A program made the translations under genes and the position numbers. Below, piece after piece: positions 46,985-46,996 of a stretch of DNA of 64,000 nucleotides. This stretch comes from Octopus bimaculoides (lineage: Eukaryota), in NCBI RefSeq assembly GCF_001194135.2, contig NC_068985.1, forward strand, positions 103,242,070 to 103,306,069, in the 5' to 3' direction. A model generated the notes under the pieces. That model saw only the letters and a program-made list of their open reading frames with translations. It searched no databases and was not told the DNA's origin. Within the stretch, counting starts at the first letter, position 1, and the number at the start of each line of letters is the position of its first letter.

Positions 46985-46996
46985 CTCCCAAGACAG
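46985..46996 (+). CDS. Candidate 12-nt microexon between the Ig and FN3 domains
   Basis: ttcttttctacctatttctattaacag|CTCCCAAGACAG|gtaagt: pyrimidine tract, AG acceptor, perfect consensus donor, phase 1-1, no stop. Changes LIE-K-TTPH to LIE-TPKTE-TTPH. No transcript evidence available. Confidence 0.55.

What the first reader, a model, noticed from the sequence alone, without database searches (positions are those of the whole stretch)
46985..46996. Candidate 12-nt microexon at the Ig5-FN3 hinge of turtle/IGSF9
453 nt downstream of the Ig exon donor lies a pyrimidine tract plus AACAG acceptor, 12 nt, then CAG|GTAAGT, a perfect-consensus donor. The phase (1-1) matches both neighbours, and inclusion replaces linker K with TPKTE. 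Established: frame-preserving microexons of 3-27 nt are enriched in neural adhesion and signalling genes of bilaterians and are routinely missed by annotation. Inference: a regulated hinge extension that could alter ectodomain geometry or binding. No UGC motif of the SRRM4/eMIC type is present in the adjacent tract. An alternative reading is a recursive AG|GT splice point.
Basis: partly seen in the sequence, partly recalled or inferred. Interest (0 to 1): 0.7.

Follow-up and report, generated by a model that had tools for sequence, protein, structure and literature searches.

The report
Genuine 12-nt microexon in octopus turtle/IGSF9
A 12-base mini-exon in an octopus nerve-cell adhesion gene is real, because its exact five-residue product already sits in the public gene models of a sister octopus species; it is an ordinary example of a well-known kind of splicing that lengthens the hinge between two protein domains.

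Summary
Window 46980-47002 reads aacag|CTCCCAAGACAG|gtaagt, 453 nt after the Ig5 exon donor. The phase is 1-1, and inclusion turns LLIE-K-TTPHAP into LLIE-TPKTE-TTPHAP.

All three RefSeq isoforms of the Octopus sinensis orthologue (LOC115211947, XP_036358844/5/6) contain exactly ...LLIETPKTETTPHAP.... The 192-residue inclusion form spliced from this window is an exact substring of them. All Octopus bimaculoides models (five current isoforms and one older model), one O. vulgaris model and one Argonauta model carry the skipped form.

The window is probably O. bimaculoides, because it is a gap-rich short-read scaffold. If so, the exon is unannotated in this species but already public in its congener.

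Homologues are named turtle, turtle homolog A/B or IGSF9B. The hinge x-TTPHAP keeps its length in most of the other orthologue representatives whose hinge I could read; only the clam Mya arenaria shows alternative inserts at the same spot. AlphaFold2 places the insert in the inter-domain linker, and confidence in the domain orientation falls from pTM 0.78 to 0.52.

There is no UGC motif, so eMIC-type regulation is not indicated. The recursive-site reading is secondary. Alternative use within one species, tissue specificity and function are untested. This is an ordinary member of a known class, of low to moderate interest.

The parts
46378..46531 (+). Upstream constitutive exon, second half of Ig5 (VDGEIDW...GTKLLIE plus 1 nt). 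Weak donor AAA|GTATGT at 46532.
   Evidence: 100% tblastn match to Octopus proteins residues 481-531. Sequence. PWM donor score 4.5.
46532..46984 (+). Upstream intron of 453 nt. Its last 27 nt hold the 22-nt pyrimidine-rich tract (46958-46979) and the AACAG acceptor (46980-46984). It is AG-free from 46951 to 46982. The best branch-point-like motif, TTAAC (A at 46981), lies too close to this AG; weaker candidates are at 46967 and 46954.
   Evidence: PWM acceptor score 6.5, within the range of the gene's real exons (4.1-11.9).
46985..46996 (+). 12-nt cassette microexon CTCCCAAGACAG, phase 1-1. Inclusion reads E-TPKTE-TTPHAP in place of E-K-TTPHAP.
   Evidence: The exact peptide is present in O. 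sinensis XP_036358844/5/6.
46997..47002 (+). Donor GTAAGT. With the exon end it forms CAG|GTAAGT, the full consensus 5' splice site.
   Evidence: It is the only CAGGTAAGT in the window and scores 12.9 on the donor PWM, the matrix maximum.
46997..57621 (+). Downstream intron of 10,625 nt.
57622..57733 (+). Downstream constitutive exon, start of FN3-1 (AG ACA ACT.. = (K/E)TTPHAPYNVTV...VIW). Strong acceptor.
42944..43059 (+). Context: first half of the Ig5 exon (DPPYFTIRP...ITWRK).
58984..59162 (+). Context: second FN3-1 exon (FRNTDALESNW...ARTLG).
8492..8773 (+). Context: Ig4 exon of 282 nt, itself skipped in O. bimaculoides isoform X5.

Best explanation
Window 46985-46996 is a genuine 12-nt, frame-preserving cassette microexon of the octopus turtle/IGSF9-family gene (O. 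bimaculoides LOC106876426, O. sinensis LOC115211947). An ordinary pyrimidine tract with a CAG acceptor and a perfect U1-complementary donor (CAG|GUAAGU) define it; the strong donor plausibly compensates for the tiny exon size. When spliced in, the inter-domain linker between the last Ig5 strand and the first FN3-1 strand grows by four residues (K becomes TPKTE). This gives a Thr/Pro-rich linker, TPKTETTPHAP. The most likely consequence is a looser or longer Ig5-FN3 hinge, changing the relative position of the Ig1-5 head and the FN3 stalk. That would make it an adjustable linker of the kind shown for the RPTP meB insert. Shown here: the sequence, the phase, the exact inclusion product in O. sinensis gene models, the skipped product in other octopod models, and the linker location. 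Inferred: that both forms coexist in one animal, that inclusion is regulated (tissue unknown), and that geometry or binding changes.
For: The splice sites, length and phase were verified. The 192-residue inclusion form spliced from the window is an exact substring of O. sinensis X1, X2 and X3. The skipped form is an exact substring of O. bimaculoides X1-X4, the older XP_014780455 and O. vulgaris CAI9723269. O. bimaculoides X5 and Argonauta also have the K hinge. A 12-nt exon cannot come from ab initio prediction, so the O. sinensis models imply spliced-read support (inference from how Gnomon works). A candidate of this strength is rare by chance in this intron (0.1% of simulations; CAGGTAAGT is unique in the window). 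Homologues are named protein turtle, turtle homolog A/B or IGSF9B. The hinge x-TTPHAP has the same length in 17 of the 18 other orthologue segments aligned, so the short form is the ancestral state. AlphaFold2 puts the insert between strand 80-90 and strand 102-108. Hinge pLDDT falls from 94 to 77 and pTM from 0.78 to 0.52 on inclusion. A second mollusc, Mya arenaria, has annotated alternative inserts of +7 and +16 aa at the same intron.
Against: No RNA reads were examined. The evidence for use is one species' computed gene models. No single species shows both forms, so 'alternative' is inferred from a between-species difference in annotation. Orthologous intron DNA could not be fetched, so conservation of the flanks is untested. 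The species of the window is inferred from its gap pattern, not proven. The drop in AlphaFold confidence may partly reflect that only one other alignment row has residues in the inserted columns. No known regulatory motif was found: there is no UGC upstream and no UGCAUG within 200 nt downstream.
Confidence: 0.8

Rival explanations
1. The 12-nt exon is constitutive in Octopus, included in essentially all transcripts. The skipped models of O. bimaculoides, O. vulgaris and Argonauta would then be annotation errors, caused by aligners that cannot place a 12-nt exon or by homology transfer.
For: All three O. sinensis isoforms include it. The donor is perfect and the acceptor is as good as those of constitutive exons. 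The Argonauta protein is named after the O. bimaculoides locus, which suggests that model was transferred or named by homology. Microexons are commonly missed by aligners (general knowledge).
Against: Six O. bimaculoides models from two annotation rounds, plus an independent O. vulgaris annotation, all join Ig5 directly to FN3-1. The short hinge is the conserved ancestral state in almost all orthologues examined. In Mya arenaria the same site is annotated as alternative within one species.
Confidence: 0.12
2. The site works mainly as a recursive splice point or recursive-splicing exon. The CAG|GTAAGT at 46994-47002 would let the 11-kb intron be removed in two steps, with the 12 nt normally lost from the mRNA.
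For: An AG|GTAAGT juxtaposition exists in an 11.1-kb intron. The best branch-point-like motif, TTAAC (A at 46981), is 15 nt upstream of the CAG at 46996 but only 3 nt from the AG at 46984. The upstream exon's own donor is weak.
Against: The 12 nt appear in O. sinensis gene products, so the 46985 acceptor is used and the exon is retained. As an acceptor, 46997 scores 1.5 against 6.5 for 46985, with two AGs in between and only 59% pyrimidines. A point 453 nt into an 11-kb intron splits it very unevenly, unlike typical ratchet points (general knowledge). This reading is compatible with the best explanation as a side function, not a replacement for it.
Confidence: 0.05
3. It is a chance pseudo-exon, and the O. 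sinensis TPKTE segment is a modelling artefact.
For: Loosely defined decoys are common: 19% of simulated introns have one at relaxed thresholds, and 2-4 arise per strand per 64 kb for any length.
Against: The peptide predicted from this window before any database search appears exactly, at the exact junction, in three models of another species. No artefact mechanism would pick this 12-mer out of an intron longer than 10 kb without spliced reads.
Confidence: 0.03

Closest known systems
Octopus sinensis LOC115211947 isoforms X1-X3 (XP_036358844.1, XP_036358845.1, XP_036358846.1)
   Same: It is the same gene (98.3% protein identity to O. bimaculoides X1) with the same hinge. The product is identical, LLIE-TPKTE-TTPHAP, and the window's spliced inclusion form is an exact 192-residue substring.
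   Different: It is another species' record. There the exon is in every model, whereas the models of O. bimaculoides (the probable source of the window) have none. No paper describing it was found.
meB mini-exon of type IIa receptor tyrosine phosphatases (PTPdelta, PTPsigma, LAR)
   Same: It is a four-residue insert (Glu-Leu-Arg-Glu) at the junction of two domains of a neuronal IgSF receptor. It acts as an adjustable linker that sets the spacing and orientation of the neighbouring domains and so controls ligand binding (PMC4423211). The size is the same and the location is of the same kind.
   Different: It is a different gene family and an Ig2-Ig3 junction, not Ig5-FN3. For meB the effect on binding is measured; here no ligand and no effect are known. 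This is an analogy of mechanism, not of membership.
Neural microexon programme dependent on the eMIC domain of Srrm234/SRRM4
   Same: The exon is 3-27 nt, frame-preserving and sits in a neuronal adhesion gene. The pyrimidine tract and the 32-nt AG-free zone are compatible with this class.
   Different: The defining UGC motif near the 3' splice site and UCUC-rich tracts (PMC8797185) are absent: no TGC occurs within 120 nt upstream. Neural specificity and eMIC dependence are untested.
Recursive splice sites and recursive-splicing exons of long introns
   Same: There is an AG|GTAAGT junction inside a long intron.
   Different: The exon is retained in gene products. The AG next to the GT has a poor tract. 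The site lies only 453 nt from the intron start.
Mya arenaria turtle-like LOC128234061 hinge variants
   Same: These are alternative inserts at the same phase-1 intron between Ig5 and FN3-1. They are Thr/Ser/Pro-rich with a shared P-K core (TTSPKGPD against TPKTE) and align in the same columns.
   Different: They are longer (+7 and +16 aa). The first and last residues are largely dictated by the shared flanking exons and by an exon ending in G. Homology and convergence cannot be told apart without the DNA, which was not retrievable.

Membership tests
Frame-preserving cassette microexon (3-27 nt) | Length of 27 nt or less and a multiple of 3, keeping the reading frame of both neighbours with no stop codon | tested here: met
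   12 nt, phase 1-1, reads TPKTE.
Frame-preserving cassette microexon (3-27 nt) | Canonical AG acceptor with a pyrimidine tract, and a GT donor | tested here: met
   22-nt tract, AACAG acceptor, CAG|GTAAGT donor. PWM scores are 6.5 and 12.9, against 4.1-11.9 and 4.5-11.4 for the gene's real exons.
Frame-preserving cassette microexon (3-27 nt) | Present in mature transcripts or products | tested here: met
   Met indirectly: the exact product is in three O. sinensis RefSeq models. No reads were examined, and none from the window's own species.
Frame-preserving cassette microexon (3-27 nt) | Both included and skipped forms occur (cassette behaviour) | tested here: inconclusive
   Included in O. 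sinensis; skipped in O. bimaculoides, O. vulgaris and Argonauta models. Never both in one species.
eMIC/SRRM4-dependent neural microexon | UGC motif close to the 3' splice site | tested here: not met
   No TGC within 120 nt upstream. The criterion is from PMC8797185.
eMIC/SRRM4-dependent neural microexon | Long AG-exclusion zone and long UCUC-rich pyrimidine tract | tested here: inconclusive
   The AG-free zone is 32 nt and the tract 22 nt, with a single TCTT/CTCT match.
eMIC/SRRM4-dependent neural microexon | Neuron-specific inclusion that depends on the eMIC domain | not testable with these tools
   Needs tissue RNA-seq or knock-down.
Recursive splice site | AG|GTRAGT juxtaposition in a long intron | tested here: met
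   CAG|GTAAGT at 46994-47002 in an 11,090-nt intron.
Recursive splice site | Strong pyrimidine tract directly upstream of that AG, and no trace left in the mRNA | tested here: not met
   Acceptor PWM 1.5, 59% pyrimidine, two intervening AGs. The 12 nt are present in O. sinensis products.
turtle/IGSF9 family (host gene) | Orthology to proteins named turtle or IGSF9, with tandem Ig domains followed by FN3 domains and a membrane anchor | tested here: met
   Best homologues are named protein turtle, turtle homolog A/B or IGSF9B, with I-set and fn3 Pfam hits. The window exons map to residues 349-631 of the 1607-residue O. bimaculoides protein. The Ig-to-FN3 boundary is confirmed by the model. I did not count the five Ig domains formally.

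The most novel reading that the evidence does not exclude
The Ig5-FN3 hinge of turtle/IGSF9 carries an ancient molluscan alternative mini-exon with an S/T-P-K core. It would be shared by cephalopods and bivalves and act as an adjustable, possibly O-glycosylated, linker that switches the receptor between binding modes, as meB does in RPTPs. Its perfect donor might in addition help stepwise removal of the 11-kb intron.
Probability: 0.1. Interest if true: 0.55.

Novelty: new member of a known kind. Interest (0 to 1): 0.3.

Why it matters
For genome annotation, this is a concrete case where a 12-nt coding exon is present in one species' RefSeq models and absent from those of a 98%-identical congener, although the genomic exon and both splice sites are intact here. 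The O. bimaculoides gene models should gain an isoform. For biology, turtle/IGSF9 proteins act in dendrite and axon patterning and at inhibitory synapses. A four-residue change in an otherwise length-invariant hinge is a cheap and testable way to tune ectodomain geometry. The effect is unproven, and this class of event is well known.

Tried and rejected
1. The first protein search with the spliced 191-residue query returned only vertebrate genomic read-through ORFs. The word index missed the octopus proteins, which turned up only after an exhaustive search with the Ig5 exon and a second search seeded with the Argonauta protein.
3. Orthologous intron DNA could not be obtained. The gene ranges are too long: Argonauta 322 kb, Mya 158 kb, O. 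sinensis 677 kb, O. vulgaris 321 kb.
4. Exact look-ups of window ORFs next to the exon found nothing.
5. Two metagenome scans for the microexon and for the Ig5 exon found nothing.
6. The literature holds no description of this exon, nor of microexons in IGSF9 or in cephalopods generally. The one preprint that covers O. bimaculoides splicing has no supplements held.
7. RNA folding of 46930-47060 shows no unusual structure (z = 0.18).
8. A self-BLAST of 46533-47600 against the window returned TA-microsatellite hits downstream of the exon in the visible (truncated) output and no repeat over the microexon.
9. The PDB sequence search gave only generic IgSF hits and no turtle/IGSF9 structure.
10. 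I did not use the third protein search. The 90% cluster of the octopus protein was listed in full (13 members) and contains no transcript-derived fragment across the hinge, so further gain was unlikely.

Full report
**What is in the sequence**

Window 46958-47002 on the + strand reads TTCTTTTCTACCTATTTCTATT AACAG | CTCCCAAGACAG | GTAAGT.
- The exon upstream (46378-46531) ends ..CTCATTGAAA. Its donor GT is at 46532, so the candidate acceptor lies exactly 453 nt downstream.
- The next exon starts at 57622, AGACAACTCCACATGCTCC.
- Splicing the exons in silico gives ...GTKLLIE-K-TTPHAPYNV when the 12 nt are skipped and ...GTKLLIE-TPKTE-TTPHAPYNV when they are included. The phase is 1 on both sides.
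- No TGC occurs in the 120 nt upstream.

**Is it more than chance?**

- CAGGTAAGT occurs once in the 64-kb window on both strands, against 0.41 expected from shuffles.
- On a rough position-weight scoring that I wrote from general knowledge of metazoan splice sites, the donor reaches the maximum (12.9).
- The acceptor scores 6.5. That is inside the range of the five real exons of this gene in the window, whose acceptors score 4.1-11.9 and donors 4.5-11.4.
- In 3000 first-order Markov simulations of the 11,090-nt intron, a frame-preserving, stop-free candidate of 3-27 nt at least this strong appeared in 0.1% of cases. At relaxed thresholds it appeared in 19%.
- Weaker decoys of any length occur 2-4 times per strand per 64 kb.
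- The thresholds were chosen after the fact, and the first stage read many introns. Taken alone this is suggestive, not proof.

**The host gene**

- An exhaustive search with the Ig5 exon found a 1535-residue Argonauta hians protein with 84% identity over the exon.
- Seeding a second search with that protein found the Octopus sinensis orthologue, and mollusc, nemertean and crustacean proteins named protein turtle, turtle homolog A/B-like or IGSF9B. They carry I-set and fn3 domains.
- The window's exons match residues 349-631 of the Octopus proteins at 97-100% over each tblastn segment; the few mismatches sit at segment ends that run past the exon borders.
- These exons are Ig4 (8492-8773), Ig5 (42944-43059 and 46378-46531) and FN3-1 (57622-57733 and 58984-59162).

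**The decisive result**

The 90% cluster of the O. sinensis protein has 13 members, all of which I read.
- *Inclusion form.* The three O. sinensis RefSeq isoforms X1, X2 and X3 (XP_036358844.1, XP_036358845.1, XP_036358846.1) all read GTKLLIETPKTETTPHAPYNV. The 192-residue inclusion form that I spliced from this window is an exact substring of each.
- *Skipped form.* The five O. bimaculoides isoforms (LOC106876426 X1-X5), the older O. bimaculoides model XP_014780455, O. vulgaris CAI9723269 and Argonauta all read (L/I)IEKTTPHAP.

A peptide predicted from raw DNA before any database look-up thus appears at exactly the predicted junction in another species' gene models. A 12-nt exon cannot be invented ab initio. 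I infer that those models rest on spliced reads, but I could not inspect them.

**Which species is the window?**

- Over these exons the O. bimaculoides and O. sinensis proteins are identical to each other and to the window, so protein cannot decide.
- The window has 11 runs of N of variable length (10-615 nt), mostly abutting TA microsatellites. That is about one gap per 5-6 kb.
- This pattern fits a short-read scaffold such as the O. bimaculoides assembly (my knowledge). It does not fit O. sinensis, which was assembled from PacBio reads and Hi-C (title cited in PMC10225486).
- If so, the exon with both splice sites is intact in a species whose annotation lacks it.
- If the window were O. sinensis after all, the exon would simply be annotated already.

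**Alternative or constitutive?**

- No species shows both forms in its models, so cassette behaviour is inferred.
- It is favoured because six O. bimaculoides models from two annotation rounds, plus an independent O. vulgaris annotation, join Ig5 directly to FN3-1.
- It is also favoured because the short hinge is the conserved state. Of the 18 other orthologue segments aligned, 17 have x-T(T/S)P(H/Y)(A/P)P directly after the last Ig5 strand, with the same length.
- The exception is instructive. Mya arenaria has three forms within one species at this same intron: VIQ-N-TTPHAP, VIQ-TTSPKGPD-TTPHAP (+7 aa) and VIQ-TTSPKGPGTCSSCALHY-TTPHAP (+16 aa). This hinge is therefore a site where small alternative inserts arise.
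- The rival that the exon is constitutive in Octopus and merely missed elsewhere keeps about 12%.

**How it probably works**

Two AlphaFold2 runs used the same 18 orthologue rows.
- *Where the insert sits.* The last Ig5 strand is placed at residues 80-90 in both forms. The first FN3 strand follows at 98 (skipped) or 102 (included). The insert therefore lies wholly in the linker.
- *Confidence.* Mean pLDDT of the hinge block falls from 94 to 77, and pTM from 0.78 to 0.52. Each domain stays confident, so the model loses a defined inter-domain orientation.
- *Caveat.* This may in part reflect that only one other row has residues in the inserted columns.
- *Composition.* The resulting linker TPKTETTPHAP is Thr/Pro-rich. 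It might be O-glycosylated, which is an inference only.
- *Closest mechanistic precedent.* The meB insert of type IIa RPTPs is four residues at the Ig2-Ig3 junction. It was shown to act as an adjustable linker that sets domain spacing and so controls ligand binding (PMC4423211).

**Regulation**

- The features that define eMIC/SRRM4-dependent microexons are UGC near the 3' splice site, UCUC-rich tracts and long AG-free zones (PMC8797185).
- They are not met here. There is no UGC within 120 nt, one CU-type match and a 32-nt AG-free zone.
- No UGCAUG lies within 200 nt downstream, and the region has no unusual RNA structure.
- Regulation is therefore unknown. I do not file the exon under the eMIC programme.

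**The recursive-site reading**

- The AG|GTAAGT junction exists. The best branch-point-like motif, TTAAC (A at 46981), is better spaced for the CAG at 46996 than for the AG at 46984.
- As an acceptor, however, 46997 scores only 1.5, with two AGs in between.
- The site lies only 453 nt into the intron, and the 12 nt are retained in products.
- At most this is a side function.

**What could not be done**

- No RNA reads were examined.
- No orthologous intron DNA could be fetched, because the gene ranges are 158-677 kb.
- No octopus DNA was found in the metagenome collection.
- No paper describing this exon was found.

**Verdict**

- It is a real microexon of a well-known kind. It is already present in a sister species' public models and probably missing from the annotation of the species at hand.
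- Novelty is small.
- The modest points of interest are the annotation discrepancy, the otherwise invariant hinge, and the second mollusc with alternative inserts at the same spot.

Noticed in passing
Not in the window: Mya arenaria LOC128234061 proteins P0165, P0230-P0234: This clam orthologue has three annotated hinge forms at the same Ig5-FN3 phase-1 intron: N, TTSPKGPD (+7 aa) and TTSPKGPGTCSSCALHY (+16 aa). The P-K core aligns with the octopus TPKTE. Shared ancestry or convergence is undecided.
   Followed up: partly
window 8492-8773 (+): This Ig4 exon of 282 nt is skipped in O. bimaculoides isoform X5 (P0220 reads ...NVTY-PPYFTIRP...). It is an annotated whole-domain alternative exon inside this window.
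   Followed up: partly
Octopus isoforms P0155, P0218-P0226; not located in the window: The isoforms differ by other small ectodomain segments: TSSNVTLVFVG after FN3-1 (absent in O. bimaculoides X2 and Argonauta), and IAVSTTATSIPDTKS and PDNDNDGTDDSDNSL near the membrane. None was found in window 59163-64000, part of which is a 615-nt gap.
   Followed up: partly
window 30171-30401 (-) and 62578-63535 (-): These open frames look like mariner/Tc1-type transposase fragments (for example ..VRFLWLEGMSGAEIH.. and ..DEKNFCQDQ..). I recognised them by eye only.
   Followed up: no
window 397-406, 2544-2673, 4642-4980, 6651-7102, 14793-15232, 32267-32276, 33200-33349, 37860-38351, 43789-43903, 51826-51944, 59428-60042: There are eleven assembly gaps of variable length, most abutting TA microsatellites. 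This points to a short-read scaffold, which fits O. bimaculoides better than the PacBio-based O. sinensis assembly.
   Followed up: partly
window 46532-46537 against 46997-47002: The constitutive Ig5 exon has a weak donor (AAA|GTATGT, PWM 4.5), while the microexon 453 nt downstream has a perfect one (12.9). This asymmetry could matter for the order of intron removal.
   Followed up: no
tool behaviour: The word-indexed protein search missed a 1594-residue protein that contains the whole 191-residue query exactly. Short queries against long database proteins can fail silently.
   Followed up: yes
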